A DNA stretch of 64,000 nucleotides, taken from Rebecca billardiae RCC1528 (taxonomy: Eukaryota; Protista; Haptophyta). The stretch covers positions 434,001 through 498,000 of the forward strand of contig OZ251232.1 in NCBI GenBank assembly GCA_965240325.2. Direction: 5' to 3'. Made by a program: the position numbers and the translations under genes. Under the pieces are notes generated by a model. That model searched no databases. It worked only from the letters and a program-made list of their open reading frames with translations, and was not told the origin of the DNA. Positions 5,914 to 35,476 of the stretch are shown here, one piece after another (position 1 is the stretch's first letter; each line of letters opens with the position of its first letter).

Positions 5914-5946
<33 letters not shown>

Positions 5947-6333
5947 GAGGCGGAGGCGGAGGCCGCGCGCGCGTGCGCGCTGCGCGTGGGCTACGCGCAC
6001 GAGCACATGCACGCCTACCTGCGCGCGCTCGACCCGGCGGCGCTCGAGGCGCTGGGCGAGGCGCGGCGCGCGGCGCGCGCGCTCGACGCGGCGCGCGCGC
6101 TCGCCGCCGAGCCCGCCGGCCTGTGGGCGGCGGGCGCGCGCGCGGCGTCGCCCGCGGCCGTGCGCGCGCGCTGCACGCTGCTCCGCGAATGCCTCGACGC
6201 GCCGCCGGCGCACGCCGCCGGCGCGGGCGCGGGCGCGCTCGCGCACGTCCTCGCGGCTATCCGCGACGTGTGTGCCGCTCGCATCGACGGCGCCGCGCCG
6301 CCGCCGAGCGGCGGCGGCGCTGACGACGGCGGC

Positions 6334-6376
<43 letters not shown>

Positions 6377-9300
6377 AGGCGGAGGCGGCGGCGGCGGCGA
6401 CGGCGGTGGCCGAGCTCGCGCTGAGCGCGCTGCGCGGCGGCGCCTCCGCCCGGCCCGACGTGCGCCGCGCCGCGCTCGTCGTCTTCGTCTCCGCGTGCCG
6501 CCCCGACGCGCCGGACGCCACCGAGCTGCCGCTGCTGCCGGGCCGCGGGCTGGACGGCGTGGCGCACTCGGAGCGTGCGCGCGTCGCACCGCTCGCCGCA
6601 CGGCTGTGCGCGCTCGAAGAAGCGGTCGCGCACGCGCTGGGCACGGCGCTGCGCCCGTCCTCGCAGCCGGCGCGCGCGACGGCGCAGGGCGCGGCGCGGC
6701 TTCAGCAGCAGCATGCCGCCGCCGACCGCGCCGACGTCGACGACGGCGACGACGGCGACGGCGGCGACGGCGGCGACGGCGGCGCGGCCGATCGTTCGGC
6801 CGAGGCCGAGGCGGAGGCCGCGCTGGGTGCGTCGCTGCTCGCCGCCCTGGCGGACGCGCACGCCGCTGCGTCCGCCGGGGCGCTCGGCGGCGCGAGCGAG
6901 CGCGCGGCCGCGCGCGTGTCGCGCGCGCTCGCGCCGCTGCTGCCGATCTTCGAGTCGCTCGCGGCGGGCGGCGGCGGCGCGGCGCGCGGCGGCGCGGAGG
7001 GCGCGCGCGCCGGCCGCGGCACGCCACACGTCGGCGCGCACGCGCAGCTCGCCGCGAGCGCGACGGCCGTCACGCTGTCGCGCGCGTGCGCGCGGCTCGC
7101 GCGCGCCGTCGCGGCGGCCACGCGCGTGCCGCCCGCCGCGCTGGGCCTCGCCGAGGCCGCGCGCGCGCTGTGCGACTCGAGCGTGGCGAGGCAGCGCGCG
7201 GGCGCTCTGATGGCCTCGCGGCGCGTGCCTGGCGGGCTGCCGGCGGCGTGGGCGGCGTGGGCGGGCGCGGGGGCGGGCTCGGACGAGATCAGGGCGCCGT
7301 TCGAGGCGCCGCTGCCGGCGCTGCGCGCGCCGCCCGTCCGCCCGCCCCACGCGCACCGCGCCCCTTCGGCGGGCGCGGACGGCGCCTCGGCCGCCTCCAA
7401 CGCGTCCGCGCTGTGCGCCTTGCTGGCCAACGGCAGGCTGGGTGCCGAGGTGCGCGCGTCCGCCGCGGCGCACCTGCTCGGCGCGGCGCTGGGCGCGGCG
7501 GCGCGGCGCGACGCGGCCGCGGCGGAGGAGGCGGCGCGGCCGCTGCTGCGCGCGCGCGCGCTCGAGGCGGCGCTCGGCGTGCTGGGCGCGCGCGCGGACG
7601 CGGCCGCGGCCGCCGCGCCCGCGCCCGCTGCCTCGGCGGGCGAGGGCGGCGGCGACGCCGCCGCCGCCATCGCGGAGGCGGACGGCGCGGACGGCGCGGA
7701 CGGCGCGGCCGAGCTCGACGGCCTGTGCTGCGCGCTCGTGCGCGCGCTCGCCGCCGCGTCCGCGCGCGCGCGCGCCGCGCTGTGCGGCAGCGCCGAGGCC
7801 CTCGGCTGCCTCGTGCGCACGGCCTTCAGCCCGCGGCCGCGCGTGGCGGCCGAGGCGCGCGCCGCGCTGCTGGCCGTTGTGCTCGACGCGCGCGCGCTCG
7901 GCGCGGACGCGGCGGAGGCGGGCGCCGAGCGCGCGCCGGCCGAGCTGGTCGACCTGACCGCCGCCGAGCCGGGCGGCGGCGGGGCCGCCCCGCGCGCGCC
8001 CGACGCCGACGCCGCCGCCGACGCCGCCGCGCCGCTCGCGCCGTGCGGGTCGCTGCGCGTGCCGCTGCTGCTGCTGCGCGCGCGGCTCTTCGACCTGGGC
8101 CCCTGGGCGGACGCGGCGGCTGAGGCGGCGGGCAGGCCGCGCTCGGCGGAGGCGGACGCGCCCGGCGCGGCGGACGCGCCGCGCGCGCGCGCGCTCGCCG
8201 CCGCGGCGCTCGGCGCGCTCGCCGCTCTGCGTGCGGACGGCGGCGAGGCCGGAGCGCGCGGCGCGGCGGCGGCGGGCGGCGGCGGCGGCGCGGCGCGCGC
8301 CGCCGCCGGCGGCGCGGCCGCTGCGGACGCCGCTTCGCGCGCGCTCGTCGTCGTCGGCGGCGAGGGCGGCGGCGGCGGGCATGGGTCGAGCGAGTGGCAC
8401 GTCGCGGAGGGCCTGCGCCCGCTCCTCGCGCTGCGCGCCGCCGCGGAGGACGCGCTGGGCTCGCTCGAGGCCGCGGGCTCGCACGCGCAGCTGCGCGCGG
8501 CGCTCACGCGACTCCAAGCGCTCGGCGCCGCCTTCGAGGTGGAGGCGGCGGCGGCGGCGACGGCGGGCGCGCTGGGCGGCGGCGCGCGGCGCGCGCCCGC
8601 GCACCCGCGCGCGCACCCGCTGCTCGGCGCGCTCGAGCTGTGCGGCGTGCCGCCCACGCTGTGGCGGCTGTGCACCGTGCTTCCCTCGGGAGAAGACGAC
8701 TGCCGTCTGCTGCTGCGCGCGCTGGCGGTGCTCACGGCCGCGCTCAGCGGGCACGCGCGCGCGGCGGGCTGGGGGGCGACGCCCGGCGCGACGGACATGT
8801 GCGTGCGCGCGCTGCTCGGCGTGTGCACGCACCTCATCGAGGCGGGCGCCGACGCCGCCCCGCCCGCCGCCGAGCCCACCAACGCCGAGGCCGAGGCTGA
8901 GGCAAGGCTCGCGCCGCCGCGCGGCGCCGCGCTGCGCGCCGCGCTGCGTGAAGGCTGCCTGGAGTACGCGCTCGCGCTGGTAGGCTTCGCGCCGCACGCC
9001 GCGCATGCGCTGCTGCGCGCGAGCGCGGGGCCGGCGCGCGCGCCGTTCGCCACGGTGCTGGCGCGCGCGCTGCAGGGCGGCGCGGCGGGTGCCGCGCCCG
9101 CGCACCCGCCGTGCGTGCGCACGCTGCGGCTCGCGCGCGCGTGCGCCGCGCACCTCGCGCGCGGCGCGGACGCGGAGGCGGAGCGACTCGCCGCGCCGCT
9201 GCTGCCGCCGCTGCTCGCGCTCGCGGCGGTGGGCTCGGACGGCGGCGGCGGCGGCAAGGGCGGGTGGCACGCCGCGCTCGGCGCGGGCGCGGCGGGCGGG

Positions 9301-10429
9301 CTCGCCAGCGCCGCGCGCCGCTCAGCGCTCGGCGCCCTCCGCCGCGGCACCGCTGAGTTGGGCGCGCTCGGCGCCCGCGATTGCCTCACGGCGATGGCGT
9401 GCCGCGCGCGCGGCGCGCCGCACGCCGCCGCGCCGGCGGGCGGCAGGGCGGGCGCCGGCGGGCCGGCGCCGGCCGTCGACGAGGCGGGCGCGCACGTCTG
9501 CCCCTCCTTCGGACTGGACGCGCTCGCGGCTGGCGCGTGGCTCCGCGCGGCGGACGCGGCGGCCGAGTCGGCGGGCGCGGCGGAGGCGGCGCGCGGCGAG
9601 CGGCCGCGCGCGCCCGCGCCGGCGGAGGGCGGCGGCTGGCTGATGCGGCTTGCGGCGGACCGCTCGCCCGACGTGCGCGCGGCGGCGTTCGGCTGCGCCG
9701 CGGTCCTCGCCCTGCCGCCGACGCGCGCGCAGCTCGCAGCCGCAGCGCCCGCCATGGGCTCTCTCGCCCTGCGCTCGCTGCTTGAGGGCGCGGCCGCCGA
9801 GCACTACTGCGTGCGCGCGGAGGCGGCGGCCATGCTGGCGCACGCCGCGCTGCCCGCGCGCGCCGCGCCGCCCGCGCGCGCCGCGAAGCCGACGCGTGCC
9901 AAGCCCGGCGGCGGCGGCGGCGGCGGCGGCGTGAGCGCGCGCGTGCCGCTCGCGCGGCGCGACGGCGCGCCGGCGCGCGCGCTGCGCTCTCGCGCGGCGG
10001 CGGGCGACAACTCGCTGCCCGGCCGTGGCGGCGGCGGCGGCGCCAAGGCGGAGGCGAAGCAACAGCCTGCCTCCGCAGCCGCCAGACCGGCCGCGCACGG
10101 CGCGGACGGCGCCGAGCCCAAGATCGGCGCGGCGGAGCGCGACGCCGAGGCGGCGGCGGCGGTGGCGGCGGCGGCGGCGGAGGCGGAGGCGGCTGCGGAG
10201 GCGGAGGCGGAGGCGGAGGCGGAGGCGGAGGCGCGCCACCTGTCTTACAGCGCCATCGACGCGGAGGGCCTGTTGTGGCGCGCGCTGCCTGCGCTGCTCG
10301 ACGACGCGCGCGCGCCGCCGGCGCTCGTGCGCGCGCTGTGCGCGCTCGGGCGCAACGCCATCGCAGACCCCGATGCCGAGCTCGGCGCGGCGCGCGCGCG
10401 GCGCACTTTCGCGCCCGCCCCGCCGGCCG

Positions 10430-10465
<36 letters not shown>

Positions 10466-13311
10466 TGCGGCTGGGTGTGTGGGCCCCGCTCTCGCGCTGG
10501 ACGCACCTGCACGGCTTCTGGGACGCGGCCGCGTCGGGCGCGGAGGACGAGGCGCAGGCGCAGGAGCGCCACCGCCAGCTCGCGCCGTGGGCGGCGCACG
10601 GCGGGCCAGCGCGCGCCGCGCGCCGCGCGCCCAGCCGCGCTGCGCTCGCGCTGCTGAGCGCGCAGTGGACGCGCGCCGCGGGCGTGGACGCGCACCTGGC
10701 GCGGGCCGCCGCGTTCGAGCTGGCGCGCTGCGTGCTCGAGCGCTGCCCGGAGCGCCCGCTCGCCGAGGCGCTGCTACGGCGCACCGAGCTCGCGCGCGGC
10801 GCCGCGGCCTGTCTCTGCGCGCGCGCCGACCGCGAGTCCGCCCCCGTGGAGCTCGCCATCGCCGGGCGGCACGTGGCCGGCGCGCCCGCCGCGGCGCGCG
10901 CCGACGCGCCGCCGCGCGTGCGCGCGGCGCGCGATGCGCTGCGCGCCGCGCTCGACCGCGCCGAGGCCGCGCCCGCCTCGCTCACCGGCGCGGCGCGCGC
11001 TCTGGTCAGGGAGTCGGCGCTCGGCGCGCTCGGCGCGCTGCTCGCGGTCGCGCCCGAGTCGAGCGCGCCCGCGCTGTGGGCGTGCCGCGCGGCGGCCGGC
11101 GCGTCGGCGCGGCCGGGCGCGCTCGTGGGCGCGCTCGCGCCGCTGCTCGCGCCCGACGCGCCGCGCGCGCTGCGCCTCGGCGCGTGCCGCGTGCTGCTGC
11201 GCCTCGCGCGCGCCGCCGAGCCCGACGCTGCGTGCGCCGTGCTCGACGCGAGCCCGCCGCCGCCTTCGCCGCGCGCCGCCGGCCGCGAGCCGCCGCCGCT
11301 GCCCGCCGGCGCCGCGCTCGCCGACGCTCTGCTCAGCGCCCTGGCCGCGGCGGAGGCGGCGGCGGGCGCGTCCGCCGCGGCGGGCGGCGCGCTGGTCTCC
11401 GCCGCGCCCGGCGCGCCGGCCGGCTTTGCCGCCACCTCCGCCGCCGACTGCGCGGCCGAGGCGGACGCGCTGCGCGCCGCCCTGCGCGCGGTGCTTGGCC
11501 CCTCGTGCGAGGCCAAGGCGGCCGCCCTGCGGCGCGGGCTGGCCGGGGCGGCGCTGCGGCGCTTCGAGGATGCGGCCGGCTTGCTCTCGGCGCACCTCGC
11601 GCGCTCGCCTGCCGAGCGCATGCGCGCGGAGCAGCCCCCGCGCGCGCTCGCGCACGCGCACTCTGCGCGCGCGCTCGCAGCACACCTGGGCGGCGGGGGC
11701 GGCGAGAGGGTGGTGCTGGGAGAGGCGGACGAGGCGGCGCGCGGCGGCGCGCGCTCGGCGCCCGCGGCGCGCGCGGCGCTCGCGTTGCAGCGGCGCTGCT
11801 GCGAGGAGCTGGGCACGCTCAAGGCGCTGCTGCTGGGCTGCGAGGCGGCGCGGCTCGAGGCGCTGCGCGCGCACCTCCCTGCCACGATCGCACGGTGCGG
11901 CGCGCCGGGTGCTGCGACCGCCGAGGGGAGCGCAGCCGAGCGCGGCGGCGCCGACGCGCGATCGCCCCGCGCGCGCGCGCTGACACCGCGCGCGCCCTGC
12001 CGCCCTGTGCGCTGCCGCGCGCGCCGCCGCCGCGTGCGCGCAGCGCGTGGCCGCTGCTGAGCGCGCACGAGCCGATGTGCATCGAGGCGCTTGGCCTGCT
12101 GTGCAACTTTGCGGTGCGCGCACGCAGCCGCGCGCGCAGCCGCACGCACAGCCGCGCACGCAGCCGCGCGCGCAGCCGCGCGCGATGTGCGCACGCAGCC
12201 GCGCGCGCACTGCGCACCACGCACGCGCCCGGCGCGCCCTCGCGCGCGCTGGGCTGGCGCGAGCGCCCTCCTCGCCGTGAGCGCGCGCGCGCGCGTGTGC
12301 GCGCGCGCGCGTGTGCGCCGACACGCGCACTCGTCCCCGGCCCCGCCGCGCCGCCCGCGCCGCCCGCGCCGCCCGCGCCGCGCGCGTGTGGGCGCCTCTT
12401 GGGCGCGGCAGGCGCACTGCGAGCCCGCCAAGCGCGCGCTGCTCTCCGAGGCGGGCCGGCCGGGCGCGGGCTCGCGCGCGTCGCTCGTGTCAGCCGTGTG
12501 TGCGCTCGCGCTCGCGCACACCGCGCAGCCGGCCGCGGCGCGCACGCTCGCGTGGACGGTATGCAGGTCGCTCGGCGGGAGCGCCGACGGGCGCGCCGCG
12601 CTGCAGCGGCTCGGCTTTGCGGCCGCGAGCGCACGGACGCTGCGCTCGGCGCTGCGCCAGCGGCACGCGTGGGCGGAGGACGGCGGCGCGGACGACGTCG
12701 CGCTCGGCGGCGCGCTCGAGCTGCTTGCCAACTGGACGCACAGCACCGACGGCTCGGCGAGCGTGCTGCGCACCGCGCCGAGCGTGCTGAGCGACCTCGT
12801 GGACGTGCTGGAGGACGCGGCGCCGCAGCCGCCGGCGCAGCCGCCCGGCGCGGCGGGCGCGGCGGCGGGGCGCGCGCGCTCGCGCGCCGCCGCCGCCGAG
12901 CTCGAGGCGGAGCAGCGGCGGCGCACGGCGCACGGCGCGGCGGCGGCGCTGTGCTTGCGCAACCTCGCGCTCCAGCCGGACGGCAAGGCGCACCTCCTTG
13001 CGCACGAGCGCGCGCTCGGCGCGCTGCTCGGCGCGCTCGGCGCGCCCGACGAGAGCGCCAAGCTGGCCGCGCACGCGTCCGCGGCGGTGTGCGCGCTGCT
13101 GCACGGCTCGGCCAAGGCCAAGGCGCTGCTCAAGGGCGGGGGCCTCGTGCGCGCGCTCATCGAGGCTGAGACGCGGATGCGCGCGCTCGCCGTCGACACC
13201 GCGACGGTCGGCGCGGGCGGCGCCCTCGGCGTGCACGAGCGCGCGCGACGGCCGTACGTCGACGAGGCGCTCGAGAACATCGCCGCCGCGCGCGCGGTGC
13301 TCACGCAGTGA
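4381..13311 (+). CDS. RTTN: Rotatin-like armadillo-repeat centriole/basal-body protein; join(4381..11894,12044..12113,12412..13311), about 2830 aa
   Basis: N-terminus MVLPAELGAKLAHPLPDVRARALHSLASKVASGLL resembles the rotatin N-terminal domain. Long helical-repeat ORF. Two GT..AG introns (11895-12043, 12114-12411) join the frames through AWPLLSAHEPMCIEALGLLCNFA/AHCEPAKR. Further in-frame introns are possible. Confidence 0.8.
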
Positions 13312-23649: not shown

Positions 23650-26600
23650 TCAGCCCGCCGCCTCCTCCTCCTCCTCGACCTCCTCCGCCATTCGGAGGAA
23701 CACGCGCTCGAGCGTCGAGTGCGTCACGGCGTAGCTGTCGATGCCCGCCGTCTCCTTGGCGCGCTCGAGCGCGCCGAAGAGCGCGGAGAGCGCGGGCGGC
23801 GCGCTCTCGGGGTCGGCGGGCGCGCGCAGCGACATGCGCAGCACGACGTGCGTGCCGCGCACCTCCTGCACCGCGCACTCGCGCAGCCGCTCGCCCGCCG
23901 CGCCGCCCGCCCACGCGCGCGCGAGCTGCTGCGCGGCGCGCACGCCCGCCTCGTCGCGCATGCGCAGGCTGCACGAGTACCCGTCGCCGAAGCGCGATTT
24001 AAGGCGGTGCGCCGTGCCGAGGCAGCGCAGCCGGCCGCCCACCATGATGCCCACGCGCTCGCACAGCGCCTCCGCCTCCTCGAGCGAGTGCGTGCTCAGC
24101 ACGACGCTCGCACCGCTCTCGCGCACGTGCGCTCGGACCGCGCGCCACATATCGCGCTTGGCGGCAGCGTCCATGCCGCTCGAGGGCTCGTCGAGGCAGA
24201 CGACGCTGGGCGCGCCGACGAGGGCGAGCGCGAGCGCGAGCTTGCGCTTGTTGCCGCCGGACAGCCGCGCCGCCGGCCGCTCAGCGTGCCGGCTGAGGCC
24301 GACGCTGTCGATGAGCCGCGCGCACTCGGCGGCCACGCGCGCGCGCGGCACGCCCCGCAGCGCGCACCACAGCTCGAGGTGTTCGCGCGCGCTGAGCGAG
24401 CGCACCAGCGCGTCGTGCTGCGGGCAGAGGCCGAGGTGGGCGCGCGCCGCCGCGACCTCCACGCCCACCCTTCGCCCGCGCACGTGCACCTCGCCGCCGC
24501 TCGGCTGCAGCTGCCCCGCCAGCATCGCGAAGGTGGTGCTCTTGCCCGCGCCGTTCACGCCCAGCAGCCCGACGCACTCGGCGGGGCGCACGCACAGCGA
24601 GAGGCTGGGCGGAAGGGGGGCGCGGGGCCGAAGGGGGCGGGCGCGGGAAGGGGGCGCGTGGGGGCAAGGGGGCGCGCGCGGGGCGCGGGCGTGACGGCGC
24701 GGCCGCACGAGAGCCGTCGAGGTGCCGCGCGCGCGCGCGCGCAGCAGGTGGTGCGTGCGTGCCTGCGCGCGCACCCGTGCACTGCAACCTTGCAGTCCCC
24801 TCCGCCGCCACCGCCGCCGCCACCGCCGCCGCCACCGCCGCCGCCACCGCCGCCGCCACCGCCGCGCGCACGGCCGCGCGCGGGCCGCGCGGCCGGGTAC
24901 ACCTTGCGAAGGTGGTGCGTGACGACGGCAAAGTCGGCGAGCGCGGGGTACTCGCCGCCCGCGGCAGCACGCCCGGCCGCCGCGCCCTCGCCCGCAGCGG
25001 CCGTGCGCGATTCATCGTCGTCCGCGCACCCGAGCAGCTGCCGAGGCGCGTGGCCGCCCGCGCGGACGCCGCGCACCGCCGAGCCGGCGGCGGCGGCGGC
25101 GGCAGCGTCGGGCGCGGCGGGGTGCGCGCCGGCGCGCGCGCGCTGCGCATCGGCGCCCTCCGCGCGCTCGAGCAGCGCGGCCACGAACGCCGCCTCCGCC
25201 GCCACGTCCTCGTCCTCCCCCGGCCCAGCAGGGCCCGGCGGCGCGGCCGCGGCCGCGGCCGCCGCCGCGCGGCGGCGCGCGCGCTCGGCGGCGGCGGCGC
25301 GGCGCGTGAGGCCGAGCATGCGGCCGAGCGCGGCGCGGAGCGCGGCGCGCGCCGGCGCGTGCTCGGCGGCGAGCGTGAGCGCGCCAAAGCCCACCGCCTC
25401 CGCGAGCAAGAAGGCGATCGGCCTGCCGAGCACGCCCCACGCCAACACCCCCTCCTCCTCCCGCGCACCCACGCCGCGCCCCGGCGCCCCATCTGGCCCA
25501 TCTGGCAGCGCGGCGGCGAGCTGCGCGGCGACCGCTCTCACCGCCAGCTGGAACATGCCGTGGCCGAGGCAGTAGGCGGGGCACAGGCTGAAGACCCACG
25601 CGGAGAGCCAGCGCTGCGCGCCCGCCGTCGCCTCCACGCTCATCAGCACGAAGTCGAGCACCACCAGCCCGAAGCCCGACGCGAAGAAGCCCGCCGCCAC
25701 GCCGAGCTGCGCGGCCGAGTGTGAGCTGAACGCTCGGGAGCAGAGCGCACAAAGAGGGATGGCGGCGGCGCCGAAGGCGAGGAAGAGGGCGGCCGTGCCG
25801 CACAGCGCCTCGGCCGAGCCGACGAACTCGTCGCGCCCCATCGCGCCGAACACGCCGAGCGTCGCCGCGCTCACCAGCACGTACGTGAGCGCGTCGCACG
25901 CCCAGTGCGCGCCCCAGAGCGCGAGCGGCGCCGCGCCCGCCAGCAGCTGCGCCGCGTGCGCGCCATCCTCCGCCTCGCGCACGGGCGCCAGCACGAAGGA
26001 GGCGGGCACGAAGGAGAAGGGGATGAGCACGAGCAGCGAGACGAAGACCGAGAGGATCGCCGACGCCGCCTGCTGCTCCGACGCGGTGCGCGGCAGCGGG
26101 TGCGTCGCGATGCTGCTCCAGCCGACGCGCCGCGCGCGCCACCCCGCGTCGGCGCGCGCCGCGCCGCCCGCCCGCGGCCGCGCGCCGCGCGCGCCACCTC
26201 TGCGCTCGGCCGCGTCGGCGCGGCGGAGCAGCATCGCGTTCCGAGCGTACGCGACGAACGTGGGCAGCGCGTGCGGCGCGCTCGAGTTGTGCAGCACGGT
26301 GAGCAGCTCGAGCTCGCCGAGCGGGGTGGGCACCGAGCTGAGCGCCAGCGCGCCGTATCTGCCGCCCGCGCCCGCGCCCGTGCCAGCCGCGGACGCGCCG
26401 CCGCCGCCGCCCGTCCGGTTGGCCGCGCCGCCGCCGCCGCTGCCGCCGCCGCCGTCCGCGGCGGACGAGGCGAGCAGGTAGTCCGACACCGCCTCGGCCG
26501 CGCCGAGCAGCCCCTCGTGCGCGCCCAGCTCGACGGGCTTGGGCGCGAGCGCGCGCGCCGCGTGCGCGCGCAGCGGGCGCAGCAGCGCCGCGGTGGGCGC

Positions 26601-27920
26601 GTCCGCGGCATAGGGCAGTTGCGAGGGGAGGGAAACGTCGGCGGCGGCGGCCCAGCCCGGCATGGCGAGCTCGACGCGCGGGCCCGCGTCGCTCACGTCG
26701 ACGCGCAGCAGCAGCAGCGCGAGCGCGACGAAGCCCACGGGCAGCGCCAGCTGCAGCGCCGCCACGCCCAGCTCTCGGCGCGCGCACAGCCAGCGCTTGC
26801 GCAGCAGGGCGCGGAACTGCGCGCACGCGCACGGCGCGCGGCGCTCGGGCGGGGCGCTGGCGGCGGGCGCGGCGGGCGCGGCGGGGGGCGGGCTCGGCGC
26901 GAACGCGGCGGAGGCCGTGGACGCCGCGCGCCCACCGCCCGTCTCGGCAGGCGATGGCTCTCCCGCCGCCACCGCCGCCGCCGCCGCCGCCCCGCCGCCG
27001 CCATCGCCGCCGCGCGTGACGTCCGCCCGCGCCCCGGCCGCCGCCGCCGCCGCCGCCGCCGCCTCCGCCTCGGCCGCGCTCTCATCGTCGGAGAGGATGG
27101 CGAGGAACACATCCTCCAGAGTGGTCACGCCCAGCGCGCACGACAGCAGGCCGAGGCCGCCCTCCTCCTCGCCCTCGGCCGGCGGCGTCCCTTGCCCTCG
27201 CCCCAGACCCTCCAGATCCGCAGCCGCCGCGGCGGACAACGCGCCGCGCGGCCCGGGCGCTGCACGCGCGCGCGCCTCCGCCGCTCCGCCGCCCACCGCC
27301 TGCCGGGCGGGCGCGAGCGCGGCGCCGCCCGCGGCGTCGGCGCCGCCCGACGCCACCTCCGCCTCGACGCGGGCGAGCAGCGCCTCGAAGCGCGGCGCGT
27401 CGTGAATGGGCAGCCTGATGACGCACTCGCGCGTGGGCGCGGCGCCCGCCACGCCGCCGTCCGCGCGCGCCTCGGCCGCCGCGTCCGCGGCCGCCGCCGT
27501 GTCGGCGTCGGCGCGCGACGGCGCCGCCGACGCGCCCCCGCCGCGGCTGCCGCCGTCCGGCGGCGCAGACGGCGCCGCCGAGCCCGCCGGCGGCGCGTCG
27601 AGCTCGGCGCTCGGCACGTGCTCGCGCACGAGCGCCAGCGCGCGCCGCGCGAGCCGCGCGTGCGGCCGCCGCCTCCCGTCGGCCGCGTGCGCGCGCAGCG
27701 AGAGCGTCAGCCTGTAGCCGACGCCAAACCGCGCCCTGAGGTACATGGGCGTGCCAGCGGCGCGCAGCGCGCCTCGCGCCAGCACAGCGACTCGGTCGCC
27801 GAGCGCCTCCGCCTCGTCCAGGAAGTGCGTGGTGAGGAGGATGGTGCGCTCCACGACGGGCGAGGAGGGCTGAGCGCACGCCGGCGCGCCGCGCGACGGC
27901 GCGGCCGCGCCGCTCGGCTC

Positions 27921-27961
<41 letters not shown>

Positions 27962-28642
27962 CGCCGCCGCCGCCCTCGCGCCACGTCGCGGGCGGCCGGG
28001 CCTGGCCCCGCGGCGGCGGCGCGCGCTCCGAGCGGATCAGCTCCCACAGCGCGCGGCGCGACGCCGGGTCCATCCCCGAGGTGGGCTCGTCCAGCACGAC
28101 GAGCGGCGATGCGCCGAGCAGCGCGATGGCCACGCACAGCTTGCGCTTCATCCCGCCTGAGAGCGTGTCGGAGCGCGCGCGCGCCTTTGGGCCGAGCCCG
28201 ACCGCGGCGCACATGCGCGCGGCCGCGTCGGCCGCGGCGTGCGCGGGCACTCCCTTCAGCGAGGCGTACAGCTCGAGGTGCTCGAGGGCGCTCAGCTCGG
28301 CCCAGAGGATGTTCCCCTGCGGACACACGCCGAGCAGCGCGCGCAGCCGCCCCATCCCGGGCCCAACCTGCTTGGAGCCGTACAGCTCGCACCAGCCCGC
28401 GCTCGGCCGGAGCAGCCCGGTGAGCAGCGCGATCGCGGTCGACTTGCCCGCGCCGTTCGCACCGAGCAGCGCGGTCACCTGCCCTCGCACCAGCGAGAGG
28501 TTGAGCCCGCGCAGCGCGACGTGGCCGTCGGGGTACACGTACCGCAGGCGGCGCGCGCGCACGGCCACGCCCGCGCGCAGCTCGGCGCCGCTCAGCGCCT
28601 CCTCAGCCGCCGCATCGCCACCGCCCTCGCCCTCGCCCTCGG

Positions 28643-28701
<59 letters not shown>

Positions 28702-30461
28702 GTGTCCGCGCTGGTACCGGCCGCGCGGCGCGCGGCGCGGCGGCACGCCGCGCGCGCGCGCGCGAGCAGGCCCGCGCGCGGCCCGTACTCGCCGGGCAGC
28801 GCCCACTCCAGCGCGGCCGCCACGCCGAACCACAGCGGCACGTCGAGCGCGAGCAGCAGCAGCACGGCGCGCAGCGAGAAGTCGCCCTCCGCCGCCGCGC
28901 GCCACGAGGCGGCGCGCCCCGCGCCCTCGAAGAGGCAGAGGAGGTTGGCGCCGAGCGTGAAGCCGAGGGGCGGCAGCACCGACGCGGCGGCCTTGGCCCA
29001 CGCGCGCCCGTCCGCGAGCACGCCCGTGCTCGTGTCGAGGAAGAGCGCGGACAGCTGCTGCGCCACCAGGAACAGCAGAGGCGCGCTGATGGCCGCCGCC
29101 TTGGCCGAGCGGAAGAGCGGAGCGAGCGCGGTCGCAAACGCGAGGCTGGCGAGCGCGAACAGGGCGAAGAGGCAGCCGACCAGCGACGCGTCGGCGAGCG
29201 GGAACGCGCTCGGCGCGAGCTCGAGGCTGACCAGCGCGCCGACGGCGAGGAACTCGAGGCCGTACGCCACGGCCCACGACAGCGCGAGCACGCGGCCGCG
29301 CAGCCCGACCATCAGCATGGCCTCGCGCACGCGCAGCTCCTTCTCGAGCACCAGGCCGCGCAGCAGCGACGAGAGGGGCACCACCATTGACACGGCGAGG
29401 ACGAGCCCGACCAGGTTGCCCACGTGCTCGAAGAACGCGTTCACGTCGTACGCCACCGTCGGGAACGGCACGCCGAGCACGAGCGGCGGCAGCGGCAGCG
29501 GCGGGTGCGCGGCCGCGAGGAGAGGCGCGAGCAGCGCGCCCGCCGCGGACGCCTCGGCGCCGGCCGGCTGGGCGCTTGCGTTCGCGCCCGCCCCGCCCGC
29601 GCGCACCCCACGCCGCGCCGCCCACTCCGCCCCGCCGCCCGGCTGGCCGTGCCCGCGCGCGCGCCCGGAGTCCGGGGAGTCCGGGGAGTCCGGGGAGTCC
29701 GGGGCGTGCTGGGAGTCCTGGGAGTCCTGGTAGTCGTGCAGCGCGGACTGCAGCGAGAGGAAGCCCGACGAGAAGTACGCGGCCCAGCGGCCGGAGAGGC
29801 CGACGGAGAAGCGGTCGACGGCGGAGCGCGTCGAGGGCAGCCTCGCGTGCGGCATGCGGATCGTCGCGTTCAGCCCACCCGGCGCGGCCGCGCGCTGCAG
29901 CACGACGGCCGCCCAGACGCGAGCCGTGCCGGAGACGTGCGCGCGCTCCAGCGCGCGCTCGGTCGGGTAGAAGCCGGCGAAGGCGCGCAGCGCGCACGGC
30001 GCGGTCTGCGCGAGGAAGGCGTGCAGCCGCCGCGCGCGCCGCGAGTCCGGCACGATCGCCAGCCCGCCCGCCTCCTCGCCGAGCAGCTCGGACGCGGCGC
30101 GCGACACGTTGCAGAAGAGCTCGAGGGGCGGGATCGCACACGAGTTGGTGGCGCCCGGGAGCCAGACCTGCGGCTCGAGGGTGAGCAGGGCGTCGACGAG
30201 GGTGGGCGGCACGTACGAGCGCGCGGCCGACGCCTCGCGGCTCGAGAGCTGCGCGCCGAGCACGACTGTGAGGCACAGGATCGCAGGCAGCGCGACTTCG
30301 CACACCGCCGTGCACGGCGCGCGCCGCTTGACGAGCCAGTGCTTCCGCAGGAGCGCGCGCAGCTGCTGCGCATCCGAGCGTGGCGCCGCCACCGGGGCCG
30401 GGGGAGGCGCGCCGACGCCATCGGTCGGCGTGCGCGCCTCAAGGAGGGGCGCCGCGAGCAT
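23650..30461 (-). CDS. Full-size ABC transporter, subfamily A; complement(join(23650..24604,24775..30461)); alternative start at 30542
   Basis: QLRALLRKHWLVKRR; two TMD-NBD halves with Walker A LLGANGAGKST and LLGVNGAGKST, signatures LSGGMKRKL and LSGGNKRKL, LDEPTSGMD, TTLEDVFL and STLERVFL. Intron 24605-24774. Confidence 0.93.
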
Positions 30462-30583
30462 GCGGAAGCGTGCAGGCCGTACTGCCGCGCCCGGGCTCTC
30501 CGGAAATCCGGGCCCAGTGGCAGCGGGCGCGAGCGACCCCATTGCCGCGTGAGCAGCACGCCGAGTCGGCACGCGCCCCGCGG

Positions 30584-30763
30584 ATGGGCCTGTGGGAGCG
30601 CTGGCTCGCTGTCCCCGGCCGGCGCAAGATCCTCGGCGGCGTGATCGTGGGCTCGTTCGCGGCGCTCGGCCTCTACCTGAGCCCCTTGCCAGACACGCCC
30701 GAGGGCCTGCACACCTCGCCGCTCGATCGGCCACCGCCGCGCGCCCAGGCGCCGCAGCAGTGA
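30584..30763 (+). CDS. 59-aa single-pass membrane microprotein; upstream cistron overlapping the LARP7 start
   Basis: MGLWERWLAVPGRRKILGGVIVGSFAALGLYLSPLPDTPEGLHTSPLDRPPPRAQAPQQ*. 55 of 59 codons end in G/C; one TM helix. Stop TGA 30761-30763 shares its A with ATG 30763-30765. Confidence 0.65.
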   Translation: MGLWERWLAVPGRRKILGGVIVGSFAALGLYLSPLPDTPEGLHTSPLDRPPPRAQAPQQ

Positions 30764-31935
30764 TGGCTGACTCGGCGCTACCGGCCGACACGCGCGCCGC
30801 GCTGCACAAGCAGCTGCGCTTCTACTTCTCGGACGCGAACCTGCGACGCGACCGCTTCCTGCAGCAGCAGCTCGGCGCCGACGGCCGCACCTTCATGCCC
30901 GTCTCGACGCTGTGCACCTTCAAGCGCGTGAGCGCGGTCACGTCGGATGCGGCGCTCGTCGCGGCCGTGCTCGCCGACGTCGACCTGGTCGAGCTGAGCG
31001 AGGACCGCGCCGGGGTGCGCCGGCGCGAGGCGGTGCGCCCAATCTCGCGCGACGACGCCGACGCGCGCACCGTGTACGTCGAGCGCCTGCCCTCGAGCTG
31101 CGACCAGGAGACGCTGGAGGCGGCGCTCACGCGCGCGGTCGGGCCTGTGTCCTTCGTCGCACTGCCGCGCTTCGACTGGCCGGAGGAGCGGCGGATCAAG
31201 GGGTACGCGTTCGTCGAGTTCGTGCACGCGCGCGACGCCGAGCGCGCGCCCGCCACGACCGTGCGTATGTGCGCACAGCCGCCTGCGCAGCCGCCTCGGA
31301 GGCGCCCGCCCGCGCCGGCAGGCGCACCCGCGGCCGACGCGGCCGGTGCGGCAGACGCCCCGTCGCCGCCGCTCGTGCTGGCCAAGCCGCGCGAGCTGCG
31401 CATCCTCCCCAAGCGGGAGTGGGAGCGCCTGAAGGCCGAGTACGCCGCGCGCGTCTCGCTCCAGCTCGAGGCGAGCGCGCAGGAGCGGCACGCCGAGCTC
31501 GCCGCGCGCGGCGCGAGCACGCCGGCCGTCGGCGCGGCCGGCCGCGCGGCGGATGAGCTCGGAGAGCCGCGCTCCGCGGAGGCGAGCGCGCAGGCGAAGG
31601 GCACGCTCATCCACATACGCGGCATCCCCGAGCACGCCTCGCGCACCGACGTCCTCCGCTGGATCAACCAAGCGGGCGCGCGCGCACTGGCGCACGCCTC
31701 GGGTGCCACCGCGGCCGCGCCGAGTGCGGCGCCTGCGGCCGACGGCGCGGGGAGCGGCGCAGCTGCACCAGCGCTCGCCAAGCCCGAGTTCGTCGACTTC
31801 CCGAAGCCGTCCGCGCCGGGCACGGCGTACGCGCGCTTTCGCGTGGAGTCCGACGCCCACGCGTACGCGGCCGCCCTGTGCGTGCACGGTGCGGCGTGCC
31901 TGCCCGGCACGCTGGTCGTGGGCGCGGGCGCGAGC

Positions 31936-31966
<31 letters not shown>

Positions 31967-32547
31967 GTGCGGGCGGCAACGATGGAGGCGATGACGAGCC
32001 AACTGTGCAGGCACGCGTGCTCAGCTTGGCGGACGCGGTCGAGTACTGGCGCGAGGTGAACGTCGAGCGCGCCCAGCGTTGGCTGCTGCTCCAGCGCCAG
32101 CGCCAGAGCTTCACGCCGCACGAGCTCGGCGCAGGCGGCGCGCCACACGCTCAGCCGCGCAACGCGCCGGGCCCGCAGCGCGGCGGCCGGGGGCCTGAGC
32201 TCTGGCACCGTGCGCGCGGCCGCGGCCGCGGCGATGGCTTCGGCCGCGCACGGGGCCCCGAGTTCGGCGCTCGTGGTCGCGGCTATGGCCGCGATCGCGG
32301 CCGCGGTGACGGCCGCAGCCGCGGCCGCGGCGACAGCTCCGAGCGCGGGCGCGGGCGCGGTCGCGCTGCAGCCAGCAGCGCGTATCACGACGGGCGTGGC
32401 TCGGGGCTCGGCGAGGGCGGTGGGGCACGCCCGGGCAAGCGTTCTGCGCACGCAGCCGGCGCAGTGGCCGACGAGGCAGCGCGGCCAGCCAAGCACGTGC
32501 GCTTCGATGCCAATGTCGCTGCGGATCATAACGATGCGGGCAACTGA
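30763..32547 (+). CDS. LARP7: La-related protein 7 (La motif + RRM1 + xRRM, RG-rich tail)
   Basis: KQLRFYFSDANLRRDRFL (La motif); RTVYVERLP...KGYAFVEF (RRM1); LARP7-type LRILPKREWERLKAEY; FVDF..AYARF..EYWREV (xRRM); C-terminal KHVRFD. Confidence 0.85.
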
Positions 32548-32992: not shown

Positions 32993-35476
32993 ATGCCCCT
33001 CTTCAAGAAGGCGATCTTTGCCGCGGCCAAGACGAACGTGACTGCAAGTGCCTCGGCGACCTTCGACGACTCCACGCTCGGCACCGGTCCCGAGGTTGAC
33101 GCTCCAGGGCCAGCCGACCACGTCGACGACAACGACGAGCCGCATGCGCCCGAGACGACAAGCGCGCCGACGCCGCCGATGAGCCCGATGCCCGAGGACG
33201 ATGAGGACGATCACGACGAGAACATGGATGCGACGAACCAGGCACGCGACGCCGACGCCGACGCCGACGCCGAGCTCATGGACATCGACGACAAGGCGAC
33301 AGCTGCAGAGGACGAGCCGCGCGATGACGACGATGCCAAGGCGAAGGAGGTCGATGCGGCTGACTCCCAAGCTCAGACCGCCCAGATGGAGGTGGACGAC
33401 GAGATGACGACTGCTGGTGCCAACCGCAACGGCGCAGCCGCGCCCGACGCCGACCCGCCCGCCGACGATGCTGCCGACGACGCGCGCGCCTCTGCCGGTG
33501 CATGCGCTCCCGCGCATGAAGAGCCGCTCGCAGAGACCGAGCGCTTCGAGCCGGCGCCGATGCCGGCGCCGACGACCGCAGACGCGGACAAGCAGCAGCG
33601 CGCAGCACCCGCCGCGCCGCCCAAGCCACGCCGCCGCGGCTTCACCGCGCCGACGGCCGCCAAGCCACCCGCGTCCGCGACGGCCGATGCTGCGCCCGCG
33701 CGCGCGCATGCAGCCGCGGCCTCAGCAGCTGGCGGCGATGGCGACGGCGACAACCAGGACGACAAGCGGGCGAAGAAGCGCGAGTCGTCGAAGCCGCGCA
33801 AGAGGAAGCCGTCCAGCGCCGACGGCGACGCCTCGAGCGCCGAGAAGAAGGCCAAGAAGAAGCGCAAGGCGGAGAAGCCGGCGGCAGACGAGGGCGGCGA
33901 GGGCGAGGCCGCTGACGGCGAGTCGACGGCGCCCAAGCAGCGCCGCTCGAAGAAGGACAAGGCCGAGCGCAAGGAGCGCAAGGAGCGCAAGGAGCGCAAG
34001 CGCGAGAAGAAGGAGCGCAAGGAGCCCGCGCCGAAGAAGACCAAGGACCCCGGCGCGCCCAAGGGCGCCCTCTCGGCGTTCATGTTCTACTCGAAGGAGC
34101 GGACGGCCGAGCTCAAGGCCGCGGGCAACTTCAGCTTCGGCGCGTCGGCCAAGGAGATCGGCGCGTCGTGGAAGGCGCTCGACGCGGAGGCGAAGGCGAA
34201 GTACACGTCGCTCGCCACGGACGACAAGGCGCGCTACGAGCGCGAGCTCAAGGAGCACAAGGAGGAGGGCAAGCTCTTCTCGACGCCGTCGCCGCGCAAG
34301 GCGGCCAAGCCGCGCGCACCGGGCGCGTCTGCGCAGCGCGCTCGCAAGGCTGCGGGCGCGCTCGCGCGAGAGCTGAGCACGCCCGGCTCGGCGCAGATGA
34401 CGGGCGACGCTCTCGAGGCGGTCGATCCACCGTCGTCATACCAGCTCGCGACCAAGAACCAAGGCTGGATCGAGCACGTGAACTTCGAGCAGGGCGAGCT
34501 CGTGGTCTGGTTCCCGCGCGCGCTCGAGCAGCTGTGCACCGAGCACGGCGACGAGCTGCGCACGGCCGGGCTGCTCGAGGGCGCGATGACGCTGAGTGCG
34601 CGCAAGGACGACGAGGTGCGCGCGCGCGTGGTGCGCGTGGAGGCGCCCGCGGAGGGCAAGCACGTGCAGCACCTCGTTCTCGCCCCGCTCACCGACGGCA
34701 CGGCGGCGGAGGGCGCGGAGACGTACGCCATGCCGCACATCTCGCCGCCCGATTGCAGCGTCTCGGCGCACATCGTGTCCGAGGCGGTGTTCGAGGCGAG
34801 CATCGGCAAGTTCGAGGAGAACGACCACGTGCAGATGCTCTTTGCAAACGAGGAGCAGGAGCGCAACGGCCAGGGTGCCGTGCTCGCCGACGTGTGGGAG
34901 GGGCGCATCATCGACATCGACGAGTCGGCGGGCGCGTTCGAGTCTGTGCGAGTGCTCTGGTACGAGCCGACGACGAAGAAGAACGAGTTCGTGCTCAGCG
35001 GCCTGCAGCAGGACACGGAGCTGTCGCCATGGCAGCTGATGCCGTCGGAGGCGCACATGCTCTACGTGGCAAAGTTTGGCCCCGTCCCGAAGTCGCGTCG
35101 TCTCCTCTACGCCGACGATGGCAGCGCATCGCCCGTCGACGACCTTGACATCGCTCCGGCCGACGGTGAGCTCGATGAGGCAATGCGCGTCGCCCACCTG
35201 CGCCTCTCGACGCTCGAGGCGAGCTCTCCATTCCTCCAGCCCGTGCCGGCGACCGACCTTGCATACCACGAGCTGGTCTCGTCGCCCATCTCGCTCGCGT
35301 GCATCAAGAGCAAAATCATCAACCGCGCGTACCCCGACTTCCCGAGCTTCGAGGCGGATGTGGAGCTCCTCATCGAGAACGCGCTCAAGGCCAACGGCGA
35401 TGACACGCTCTTCTTCGCGCTCGCTACGGTGCTGAACAAGGAGTGGGGCCGCGTCAAGCAGAGCCTCGAGCGCTGA
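32993..35476 (+). CDS. Chromatin protein: acidic/basic IDR + HMG box + PHIP/BRWD-like Tudor-type region + bromodomain
   Basis: DPGAPKGALSAFMFY...KEIGASWKAL...KARYERE (HMG box); GELVVWFPR, WEGRI, VRVLW, LSPWQL; SPFLQPV..YHELVSSPISL..NALKAN (bromodomain). Confidence 0.85.
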   Translation: MPLFKKAIFAAAKTNVTASASATFDDSTLGTGPEVDAPGPADHVDDNDEPHAPETTSAPTPPMSPMPEDDEDDHDENMDATNQARDADADADAELMDIDDKATAAEDEPRDDDDAKAKEVDAADSQAQTAQMEVDDEMTTAGANRNGAAAPDADPPADDAADDARASAGACAPAHEEPLAETERFEPAPMPAPTTADADKQQRAAPAAPPKPRRRGFTAPTAAKPPASATADAAPARAHAAAASAAGGDGDGDNQDDKRAKKRESSKPRKRKPSSADGDASSAEKKAKKKRKAEKPAADEGGEGEAADGESTAPKQRRSKKDKAERKERKERKERKREKKERKEPAPKKTKDPGAPKGALSAFMFYSKERTAELKAAGNFSFGASAKEIGASWKALDAEAKAKYTSLATDDKARYERELKEHKEEGKLFSTPSPRKAAKPRAPGASAQRARKAAGALARELSTPGSAQMTGDALEAVDPPSSYQLATKNQGWIEHVNFEQGELVVWFPRALEQLCTEHGDELRTAGLLEGAMTLSARKDDEVRARVVRVEAPAEGKHVQHLVLAPLTDGTAAEGAETYAMPHISPPDCSVSAHIVSEAVFEASIGKFEENDHVQMLFANEEQERNGQGAVLADVWEGRIIDIDESAGAFESVRVLWYEPTTKKNEFVLSGLQQDTELSPWQLMPSEAHMLYVAKFGPVPKSRRLLYADDGSASPVDDLDIAPADGELDEAMRVAHLRLSTLEASSPFLQPVPATDLAYHELVSSPISLACIKSKIINRAYPDFPSFEADVELLIENALKANGDDTLFFALATVLNKEWGRVKQSLER

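What the first reader, a model, noticed from the sequence alone, without database searches (positions are those of the whole stretch)
30584..32547. Probable bicistronic nuclear locus: membrane microprotein ORF coupled to LARP7 by a TGATG stop/start overlap
Seen: a 59-codon ORF (ATG 30584) with 55/59 G/C-ending codons and one clear TM helix ends at TGA 30761-30763, whose A is the first base of the LARP7 ATG. No other ATG lies between the two starts in any frame. There is no intergenic space for a poly(A) site or promoter. The only obvious promoter space is the ~120-bp gap shared with the divergent ABCA gene. The first ATG has C at -3 (weaker context) and the LARP7 ATG has G at -3 and +4. Known: polycistronic nuclear mRNAs with short upstream ORFs occur in green algae, and stop/start overlaps mediate coupling in bacteria and some viruses. 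Inference: one mRNA makes two unrelated proteins by leaky scanning or termination-reinitiation, in a lineage where I know of no such report.
Basis: partly seen in the sequence, partly recalled or inferred. Interest (0 to 1): 0.85.

Follow-up and report, generated by a model that had tools for sequence, protein, structure and literature searches.

The report
Conserved microprotein ORF preceding haptophyte LARP7
A 59-codon reading frame directly in front of the LARP7 gene of a very GC-rich haptophyte alga encodes a small membrane protein under purifying selection that stays attached to LARP7 in six related lineages, with the sequence hallmarks of two proteins read from one mRNA, though no RNA data could be reached to show this.

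Summary
The small ORF is not a chance ORF. Homologues (55-71 aa; MSLWxRFLxVPGRRK…GLYLSP) sit on the same strand directly before the LARP7 start in six Pavlovales-type lineages with DNA, including Diacronema lutheri and Pavlovales sp. CCMP2436. They are unannotated in both public genomes.

Evidence for a selected coding sequence and a fixed pair:
- dN/dS on the conserved block is 0.09-0.60, and GC3 periodicity runs to the stop codon.
- The upstream neighbour changes between lineages, but the micro-LARP7 pair is never broken.
- Inter-ORF gaps are -1, 5, 6, 7, 40 and 41 nt.

Evidence bearing on mechanism:
- All six lineages have no ATG in any frame between the two starts.
- All six have a pyrimidine at -3 of the micro ATG and a purine at -3 of the LARP7 ATG. 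These are the leaky-scanning hallmarks described for green-algal bicistrons.
- The TGATG overlap is peculiar to this genome, so it is not the conserved coupling device.

No RNA evidence could be reached, so co-transcription is inferred. I found no haptophyte report of this. Other first readers noted similar pairs elsewhere in this genome; I did not test them. I rate it a new member of a known kind, of moderate-to-high interest.

The parts
24558..30461 (-). Divergent ABCA-type ABC transporter gene; start codon at 30461..30459
   Evidence: Pfam ABC2_membrane_3 (two stretches), ABC_tran. N-terminus alignable with the ABCA N-terminus in L010. GC by codon position 0.81/0.64/0.95.
30462..30583 (.). 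122-nt gap between the two divergent start codons: the presumed shared promoter and the 5' leader of the micro-LARP7 unit. It holds no + strand ATG and carries a palindrome-like TCCGGAAATCCGG at 30499-30511.
   Evidence: No codon periodicity in the leaders of the six lineages (0.67/0.60/0.68). The TSS is not mapped.
30584..30763 (+). Microprotein ORF: 59 codons plus TGA. The ATG is in weak context (C at -3).
   Evidence: Homologues in six lineages. dN/dS 0.09-0.60.
30584..30685 (+). Conserved N-terminal 34 codons. They hold 15 of the 17 invariant alignment columns: M1 L3 W4 R6 L8 V10 P11 G12 R13 G19 F25 G29 L30 S33 P34.
   Evidence: Alignment A1. Between lineages, codon position 2 identity is 0.62-0.97 against about 0.5 at position 3.
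30620..30679 (+). Predicted transmembrane helix (residues 13-32), preceded by a short helix (3-8) and a VPG kink
   Evidence: AlphaFold2 on A1, pLDDT 83-87 over residues 1-30. Hydropathy maximum.
30686..30760 (+). Variable proline-rich C-terminal tail (25 codons), predicted disordered. Its length and sequence differ between lineages, but codon periodicity is retained.
   Evidence: Pooled tail GC by position 0.79/0.63/0.84.
30761..30765 (+). TGATG: the micro stop overlaps the LARP7 start by one base. Specific to this genome.
   Evidence: Gaps in the other lineages are 5, 7, 6, 40 and 41 nt.
30763..32547 (+). LARP7-like gene: single exon, 594 aa. La motif at residues 15-71 (30805-30975), RRM1 at residues 104-162 (31072-31248), Gly run and RG-rich C-terminus. 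The ATG is in strong context (G at -3 and +4).
   Evidence: Pfam La 5.3e-17 and RRM_1 4.3e-08. Human LARP7 7slp/4wkr at E 5e-22. Orthologues are 51-58% identical in the La module and share the same N-terminus.

Best explanation
The locus is a conserved two-ORF transcription unit of pavlovophycean haptophytes.

ORF1 (30584-30763) encodes a 59-aa single-pass membrane microprotein of a previously unannotated family. It has an N-terminal basic amphipathic segment, a VPG kink, a Gly/Ala/Ser-rich TM helix and a disordered tail. ORF2 (30763-32547) encodes a LARP7-type La-module RNA-binding protein.

Most likely both are read from one capped mRNA started in the 122-nt gap shared with the divergent ABCA gene. 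Some scanning 40S subunits initiate at the weak-context ORF1 AUG. The rest leak past it, meet no other AUG, and initiate at the strong-context LARP7 AUG.

Shown: ORF1 is a selected coding sequence, its linkage to LARP7 is conserved, and the start-context and AUG-depletion pattern is conserved. Inferred: one mRNA, translation of both ORFs, and leaky scanning as the mechanism.

The one-base TGATG overlap is an incidental extreme of a short, variable inter-ORF spacer.
For: 1. Coding signature. GC by codon position is 0.75/0.57/0.92, as in neighbouring genes. Periodicity also holds in the variable tails and is absent from the leaders. Over this stretch the LARP frame and the ABCA frame put their third positions on low-GC columns, so neither is coding there.
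2. Conservation. Homologues occur in D. lutheri (L003), Pavlovales sp. CCMP2436 (L004), and four unnamed lineages: L005-9, L010/11, L012, and P0011 (protein only, no DNA). NG86 dN/dS is 0.09-0.60 with dS about 0.7-2.5.
3. Linkage. In all six lineages with DNA, ORF1 is on the same strand and ends -1 to 41 nt before the LARP7 ATG. The upstream neighbour differs: ABCA in the window, L010 and L012; other genes in L003, L004 and L005.
4. Leaky-scanning hallmarks.
   - Zero ATGs in any frame between the two starts in 6 of 6 lineages. The mononucleotide expectation is 0.9-1.7 each; dinucleotide-shuffle joint P is about 0.003.
   - Position -3 is a pyrimidine at all six ORF1 ATGs and a purine at all six LARP7 ATGs; +4 is G at five of six LARP7 ATGs.
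   - A rough window baseline gives a -3 purine at 14 of 19 putative starts.
5. Match to a tested system. The same three features, plus a short ORF1 and a short inter-ORF, define green-algal bicistrons, where leaky scanning was shown by mutation (PMC11892635; PMC7896298).
6. No fusion. The relative frame of ORF2 differs between lineages. No frame-restoring GT..AG intron exists in the window.
Against: - There is no RNA, ribosome or peptide evidence. No RNA run was listed, and two JGI scans returned no Pavlovales transcript.
- AUG depletion would equally be selected if the ORF1 region were merely part of a LARP7 5' UTR from an internal TSS.
- The six lineages are related, so the joint probabilities overstate independence.
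- The Kozak baseline for this clade is rough (19 putative starts, some spurious).
- The microprotein has no recognisable relatives outside Pavlovales and no assigned function.
- L012 has a second in-frame ATG 42 nt upstream of the conserved start.
Confidence: 0.6

Rival explanations
1. Two overlapping monocistronic transcripts. The microprotein has its own short mRNA that ends inside LARP7. LARP7 mRNA starts from a TSS (or a trans-splice or processing site) inside or just after ORF1, so ribosomes never meet the ORF1 AUG on the LARP7 message.
For: - The genome is compact, with 122 nt between divergent starts and only 10-52 nt in L012, so overlapping transcription is plausible.
- AUG depletion of ORF1 is also expected if ORF1 doubles as a LARP7 5' UTR.
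- More distant LARP7 transcripts have short leaders of 38-130 nt.
Against: - It does not predict the conserved pyrimidine at -3 of the ORF1 AUG in 6 of 6 lineages.
- It requires a poly(A) site inside the LARP7 coding sequence in every lineage.
- The pair is never separated while other neighbours change.
Confidence: 0.2
2. ORF1 is a conserved-peptide uORF. Its nascent peptide acts in cis on the translating ribosome to regulate LARP7 synthesis, and the released peptide has no function of its own.
For: - The peptide sequence is under purifying selection.
- It lies immediately upstream of a main ORF.
- It has no homologues as a free-standing gene elsewhere.
- A weakly conserved P-x-(D/S)-R motif lies in the tail (P46 and R49 invariant).
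Against: - Conservation is concentrated in the N-terminal 34 residues (15 of 17 invariant columns). The C-terminal 23-37 residues next to the stop vary in length and sequence. This is the opposite of what a stalling peptide at termination would show.
- The conserved part folds as a TM helix.
- Language-model features place it weakly among small single-TM proteins (scores 0.76-0.82).
- This reading is not exclusive of the best explanation: any translated ORF1 lowers ORF2 output.
Confidence: 0.13
3. Termination-reinitiation at the TGATG overlap. The ribosome that finishes ORF1 restarts at the overlapping LARP7 AUG, as in some viral stop/start overlaps.
For: The stop and start share a base in the window. 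Gaps are only 5-7 nt in three other lineages.
Against: - The overlap is unique to this genome. Two lineages have gaps of 40-41 nt.
- From established knowledge, reinitiation after a 55-71-codon ORF is inefficient without a dedicated upstream element, and the sequence just upstream of the stop is the least conserved part.
- This model does not predict the weak ORF1 start context.
- In green algae, an inverse dependence of ORF2 output on ORF1 Kozak strength argued against reinitiation (PMC11892635).
Confidence: 0.04
4. A chance ORF in a GC-rich 5' UTR, or a mis-modelled first exon or non-AUG extension of LARP7.
For: Long ORFs occur in all six frames of this very GC-rich DNA. The LARP frame is itself open upstream to 30592.
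Against: - Frame-specific periodicity.
- dN/dS<1 across six lineages.
- Differing relative frames between lineages.
- No frame-restoring GT-AG intron in the window.
- The LARP7 N-terminus and ATG are conserved in orthologues.
Confidence: 0.03

Closest known systems
Exclusively bicistronic nuclear loci of green algae (Chlamydomonas, Chromochloris, Auxenochlorella), translated by leaky scanning (PMC7896298; PMC11892635)
   Same: - Short ORF1 (here 180 nt; algal medians 291-357 nt) before a normal-sized ORF2.
- Very short inter-ORF (here -1 to 41 nt; the A. protothecoides median is 40 nt).
- Weak Kozak-like context at ORF1 and a consensus-like context at ORF2.
- Depletion of AUG before ORF2.
- The ORFs are often in different frames.
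- ORF1 is often a small membrane or mitochondrial protein (TOM22, OST4, PET100), or a 'pioneer' protein of unknown function.
- Colinearity is conserved across deep divergences.
   Different: - The supergroup is different: Haptista (Pavlovales), not Chlorophyta.
- This gene pair is not reported there.
- Here there is no Iso-Seq, Ribo-seq, proteomic or mutational evidence.
- A one-base overlap lies at the extreme of the spacer range.
Functional uORF-encoded microproteins of animals, such as the MIEF1 upstream ORF (recalled from memory, not tested here)
   Same: A small conserved protein is encoded upstream of, and on the same mRNA as, an unrelated larger protein. Many such proteins are small mitochondrial or membrane proteins.
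   Different: Those loci have long 5' UTRs and no tight stop/start spacing. No homology to this peptide was found.
Conserved-peptide uORFs (CPuORFs) of plants and fungi
   Same: An upstream ORF whose amino-acid sequence, not just its presence, is conserved.
   Different: CPuORF conservation is typically C-terminal and acts in the exit tunnel. Here the conserved part is an N-terminal TM segment and the C-terminus is variable.
Viral termination-reinitiation overlaps (AUGA/UGAUG with an upstream 18S-complementary element)
   Same: A UGAUG stop/start overlap, in this genome only.
   Different: The overlap is not conserved among lineages. The region upstream of the stop is the least conserved part. 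This is a cellular gene pair.
LARP7 family (human LARP7, 7slp/4wkr), for ORF2
   Same: La motif plus RRM1 align to human LARP7 over residues 12-181 at E 5e-22. UniRef names the D. lutheri orthologue LARP7.
   Different: Pfam did not detect the C-terminal RRM_3/xRRM in the window protein at E<=1. More distant homologues do carry PF08777. Its RNA partner in haptophytes is unknown.

Membership tests
Green-algal-type bicistronic nuclear locus (leaky scanning) | Two colinear, independently conserved ORFs with a very short inter-ORF spacer; ORF1 much shorter than ORF2 | tested here: met
   59 aa against 594 aa. Gaps of -1, 5, 7, 6, 40 and 41 nt in six lineages. Both ORFs are conserved.
Green-algal-type bicistronic nuclear locus (leaky scanning) | Weak Kozak-like context at ORF1, consensus-like context at ORF2 | tested here: met
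   Position -3 is C/T/C/T/C/C at ORF1 and G/A/G/G/G/A at ORF2; +4 is G at 5 of 6 ORF2 starts. The clade baseline is only rough.
Green-algal-type bicistronic nuclear locus (leaky scanning) | Under-representation of AUG between the ORF1 start and the ORF2 start | tested here: met
   0 observed in 6 of 6 lineages. The summed mononucleotide expectation is about 8.2. Dinucleotide-shuffle joint P is about 0.003, and lineage relatedness makes this optimistic.
Green-algal-type bicistronic nuclear locus (leaky scanning) | A mature capped, polyadenylated mRNA that spans both ORFs, with no monocistronic forms | not testable with these tools
   No RNA run was listed, so read laying could not be used. JGI scans gave no Pavlovales transcripts.
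Green-algal-type bicistronic nuclear locus (leaky scanning) | Both polypeptides produced (Ribo-seq, proteomics, in vitro translation) | not testable with these tools
   Only indirect evidence is available: purifying selection on ORF1.
Conserved-peptide uORF (cis-acting stalling peptide) | Peptide conservation concentrated at the C-terminal part near the stop codon | tested here: not met
   15 of 17 invariant columns lie in residues 1-34. The tail varies in length (23-37 residues) and sequence.
Conserved-peptide uORF (cis-acting stalling peptide) | Peptide-sequence-dependent repression of the main ORF | not testable with these tools
   Needs reporter assays.
Termination-reinitiation stop/start overlap | Stop and restart codons overlapping or within a few nt, conserved among relatives | tested here: not met
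   The overlap occurs only in the window. Gaps of 40 and 41 nt are seen in L010 and L012.
Termination-reinitiation stop/start overlap | Conserved upstream element that tethers the 40S subunit (18S rRNA complementarity) | not tested
   The 18S rRNA of this organism was not retrieved. The relevant 40-80 nt before the stop are the least conserved part of ORF1.
LARP7 (ORF2) | La motif followed by RRM1 forming a La module | tested here: met
   PF05383 at 5.3e-17 and PF00076 at 4.3e-08. Human LARP7 at E 5e-22 against human La at about 5e-11.
LARP7 (ORF2) | C-terminal xRRM (RRM_3, PF08777) | tested here: inconclusive
   Not reported by Pfam at E<=1 for the window protein. It is present in more distant homologues P0006 and P0008-P0010.

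The most novel reading that the evidence does not exclude
Bicistronic nuclear mRNAs translated by leaky scanning may be a general, ancient feature of pavlovophycean (perhaps all) haptophyte genomes, not a one-off locus. It would have arisen independently of, or be shared by deep ancestry with, the green-algal system. In that case small unannotated membrane or mitochondrial proteins are systematically hidden in front of annotated genes. Other first readers noted LYR-, twin-CX9C- and other micro-ORFs tightly upstream of larger genes elsewhere in this genome; I did not test these notes.
Probability: 0.35. Interest if true: 0.78.

Novelty: new member of a known kind. Interest (0 to 1): 0.62.

Why it matters
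Nuclear bicistronic mRNAs that are the only expressed form of their genes have been demonstrated mainly in green algae. The literature I could search also mentions red algae, some fungi and Cryptosporidium (abstract listed). None of it mentions haptophytes.

A pair conserved across Pavlovales, carrying the same start-context and AUG-depletion signature, would matter in four ways.
1. It suggests the leaky-scanning solution is either much older or repeatedly evolved in compact, GC-rich algal genomes.
2. It adds an unannotated, selected membrane microprotein family to haptophyte proteomes. The family is missing from both public Pavlovales annotations.
3. It warns that gene finders that allow one ORF per transcript miss such genes.
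4. It offers a natural two-gene expression design for engineering D. lutheri, an aquaculture and lipid-model alga.

Tried and rejected
- RNA evidence: the look-up of sequencing runs (kind rna) listed no run, so read laying could not be used.
- JGI scans: the scan with the microprotein alignment matched 134 patterns, but none passed the tblastn confirmation. The query is short and the window sequence is the most divergent. A second scan with the La module returned only distant LARP7 loci of 43% identity or less, none with the micro ORF.
- Family assignment of the microprotein. Pfam and NCBIfam gave no hit for any member. A PDB profile search gave only E 1.5 noise. Two billion-scale protein searches found only Pavlovales-type homologues. 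Foldseek against PDB found nothing. The shape search of the Atlas returned generic signal-anchor helices. Atlas features gave only a class-level likeness to COX6C, MITRAC7, BRAWNIN and ATP19 at 0.76-0.82, plus unnamed ascomycete clusters at 0.91. I treat these as leads, not as assignments.
- A remembered resemblance of 'VPGRRK' to SMIM4/UQCC5 was not tested. I had no tool-derived sequence for it, so I do not claim it.
- N-terminal extension of LARP7 from the upstream-open frame: rejected by codon-position GC.
- Extension of ABCA through the region: rejected in the same way.
- Spliced fusion: no frame-restoring GT..AG intron in the window.
- Window-wide scan for further micro-ORF/big-ORF pairs: only this one passed. 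The others look like antisense-frame artefacts.
- The Logan contigs carrying the exact peptide (L001, L002) span parts of both divergent genes, so they say nothing about transcripts.
Full report
**Observation**

The region reads exactly as described. An ATG at 30584 opens a 59-codon frame. Its TGA (30761-30763) shares its A with the ATG (30763) of a 594-aa ORF. On the + strand between 30400 and 30800 the only ATGs are at 30460, 30584 and 30763. The downstream protein has a La motif and an RRM_1. Its best solved relative is human LARP7, at E 5e-22 over residues 12-181, against about 5e-11 for human La. The divergent upstream gene is ABCA-type. Its start at 30461 is supported by the N-terminus of the L010 orthologue. 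That leaves 122 nt between the two start codons.

The window is extremely GC-rich, at 0.58-0.85 per 2 kb, and long ORFs occur in all six frames. Openness alone therefore means nothing.

**Is the small ORF coding?**

GC by codon position is 0.75/0.57/0.92. This matches LARP (0.80/0.62/0.88) and ABCA (0.81/0.64/0.95). Two other frames are open across this stretch: the LARP frame, open back to 30592, and the ABCA frame, open to 30809 on the minus strand. Both place their third positions on low-GC columns, so neither is the coding frame here.

**Relatives**

The La module finds its closest relatives in Pavlovales haptophytes: Diacronema lutheri, Pavlovales sp. CCMP2436 and unnamed Logan and JGI contigs, at 52-58% identity. 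I fetched those loci and read upstream of each LARP7 start. Every one carries a homologous ORF of 57-71 aa on the same strand.

Sequence searches with the peptide itself added two more lineages:
- P0011, for which no DNA was available.
- P0013, on locus L012, whose downstream fragment is again the LARP7 N-terminus.

Alignment A1 has 17 invariant columns, 15 of them within the first 34 residues (MSLWxRFLxVPGRRK…F…GLYLSP). The tail varies in length and sequence. The ORF is not among the called or annotated genes in either public genome locus, L003 or L004.

**Selection**

I analysed an ungapped 32-codon block.
- Identity between lineages is 0.62-0.97 at codon position 2 and about 0.5 at position 3. 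The latter is saturation for a G/C-only third position.
- NG86 dN/dS is 0.09-0.60 in all 15 pairs. L010 against L012 gives 91% amino-acid identity at dS of about 1.
- Pooled over the six lineages, periodicity holds in the conserved block (0.60/0.53/0.86) and in the variable tails (0.79/0.63/0.84). It is absent from the 120-nt leaders (0.67/0.60/0.68).

The frame is therefore translated to its stop and the peptide is under purifying selection.

**Linkage**

- Inter-ORF gaps are -1 nt (window), 5 (D. lutheri), 7 (CCMP2436), 6 (L005), 40 (L010) and 41 (L012).
- The frame of LARP7 relative to ORF1 differs between lineages (+2, +2, +1, 0, +1). This excludes a conserved fusion, frameshift or readthrough product.
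- The window has no frame-restoring GT..AG intron that could join ORF1 to the La module. The candidates in other lineages are non-conserved chance pairs.
- The upstream neighbour is ABCA in the window, L010 and L012, but other genes in L003, L004 and L005. Rearrangements have hit the 5' side of the pair but never the junction.
- More distant LARP7 transcripts and loci (L013-L032) have no such ORF. Several are transcript-like contigs with leaders of only 38-130 nt.

**Mechanism**

Three sequence features are shared by all six lineages.
1. There is no ATG in any frame between the ORF1 ATG and the LARP7 ATG. The mononucleotide expectation is 0.9-1.7 per lineage. Dinucleotide-preserving shuffles give P(0) of 0.20-0.69 each, about 0.003 jointly. 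That joint value is optimistic because the lineages are related.
2. Position -3 of the ORF1 ATG is a pyrimidine: C, T, C, T, C, C.
3. Position -3 of the LARP7 ATG is a purine (G, A, G, G, G, A), with G at +4 in five of six.

A rough baseline from 19 putative starts in the window gives a -3 purine in 14.

These are the features that characterise green-algal bicistronic loci: a weak ORF1 context, AUG depletion before ORF2, a consensus-like ORF2 context, a short ORF1 and a short inter-ORF. There, in vivo mutagenesis supported leaky scanning and argued against reinitiation and IRES activity (PMC11892635; PMC7896298).

Gaps of -1 to 41 nt after a 55-71-codon ORF are a poor setting for classical reinitiation; this rests on established knowledge of scanning. 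The TGATG overlap is confined to this genome. I therefore read the overlap as an incidental end-point of spacer shrinkage, not as a coupling device.

**What the microprotein is**

AlphaFold2 on A1 gives a short helix (residues 3-8), a VPG kink, a helix at 13-32 and a disordered tail. pLDDT is 83-87 for residues 1-30.

No family could be assigned:
- Pfam and NCBIfam gave nothing.
- The PDB profile search gave nothing.
- Two very large protein searches found only Pavlovales-type homologues.
- Fold searches were uninformative, as expected for a single helix.
- Language-model features place it weakly (0.76-0.82) among small single-TM mitochondrial proteins (COX6C, MITRAC7, BRAWNIN/DUF4500, ATP19), and at 0.91 near unnamed ascomycete ~68-aa clusters. 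These are leads only.

I commit to 'small single-pass membrane protein, possibly of an organelle inner membrane'. A functional tie to LARP7 is neither shown nor needed.

**Rivals**

- Overlapping monocistronic transcripts with an internal LARP7 TSS would also select against AUGs in ORF1. They do not predict the conserved weak ORF1 context. I give this 0.2.
- A cis-acting conserved-peptide uORF is disfavoured because conservation is N-terminal and TM-like rather than C-terminal. I give it 0.13. It is not exclusive of the main reading.
- Termination-reinitiation gets 0.04.
- A chance ORF or fused exon gets 0.03.

**What is missing**

I could obtain no RNA evidence. No RNA run was listed, and the JGI scans found no Pavlovales transcripts. 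The Logan contigs carrying the exact peptide span both divergent genes and are uninformative about transcripts. Co-transcription and dual translation therefore remain inferences.

**Known or new**

Full-text searches found no report of nuclear bicistronic genes in haptophytes. [quoted passage not shown]

Other first readers of this scan noted similar candidates elsewhere in the same genome:
- an LYR ORF 11 nt before an FKBP15-like gene;
- a twin-CX9C ORF before a MalY-type lyase;
- an ATGA-coupled micro-ORF before an oxygenase;
- a micro-ORF before QSOX.

None has been followed up, and I could not reach those regions. A scan of this window found no second pair.

**Verdict**

This is a real, conserved, previously unannotated microprotein gene, permanently coupled to LARP7 in Pavlovales. 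It shows the full sequence signature of a leaky-scanning bicistron. I file it as a new member, in a new eukaryotic lineage, of a known kind. Interest is 0.62. Confidence in the one-mRNA leaky-scanning model is 0.6. My judgement that ORF1 is a genuine selected coding sequence is about 0.9.

Noticed in passing
window 30499-30511; L003 about 1881-1950 and 3640-3715: A palindrome-like TCCGGAAATCCGG lies 85 nt upstream of the micro ATG, in the shared ABCA/micro gap. It is the only match in the window (16 of 100 shuffles give one). D. lutheri has six near-copies (TCCGAAATTCGGA-like), clustered at both ends of the intergenic region upstream of its micro-LARP7 pair. None was found in L004, L005, L010 or L012. 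It may be a promoter element of some Pavlovales.
   Followed up: partly
L003 3807-3995 (D. lutheri JAGTXO010000001.1) and L004 3778-3993 (Pavlovales sp. CCMP2436 MU631613.1): The conserved microprotein ORF is absent from the called or annotated genes of both public Pavlovales genome records.
   Followed up: yes
L012 2633-2690: In this lineage the divergent ABCA start codon lies only 10 nt from an extra in-frame ATG (2646), and 52 nt from the conserved micro start (2688). The divergent transcripts must therefore overlap, or the 5' leader is extremely short.
   Followed up: no
window 1-2000 and 6001-12000; ORF 4381-12060 (+): Stretches reach 0.84-0.85 GC, and there is a single 2559-codon ORF with GC3 of 0.95. 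This is extreme even for this genome.
   Followed up: no
window 31930-31962 and 32170-32350; ABCA about 28600-28700: Low-complexity coding repeats: a (GGC)n glycine run and an RG/RGG-rich C-terminus in LARP7, and (GAC GCN)n 'DADADA' and poly-Gly runs in the ABCA protein.
   Followed up: no
window 32993-35476 (+): The gene downstream of LARP7 encodes an HMG-box plus bromodomain protein with long acidic and basic low-complexity regions.
   Followed up: no
same genome, other pieces (not in this window): Four other first-reader notes describe micro-ORFs tightly upstream of larger genes: LYR/FKBP15-like, twin-CX9C/MalY, ATGA micro-ORF/oxygenase, and micro-ORF/QSOX. If real, the phenomenon is genome-wide.
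   Followed up: no
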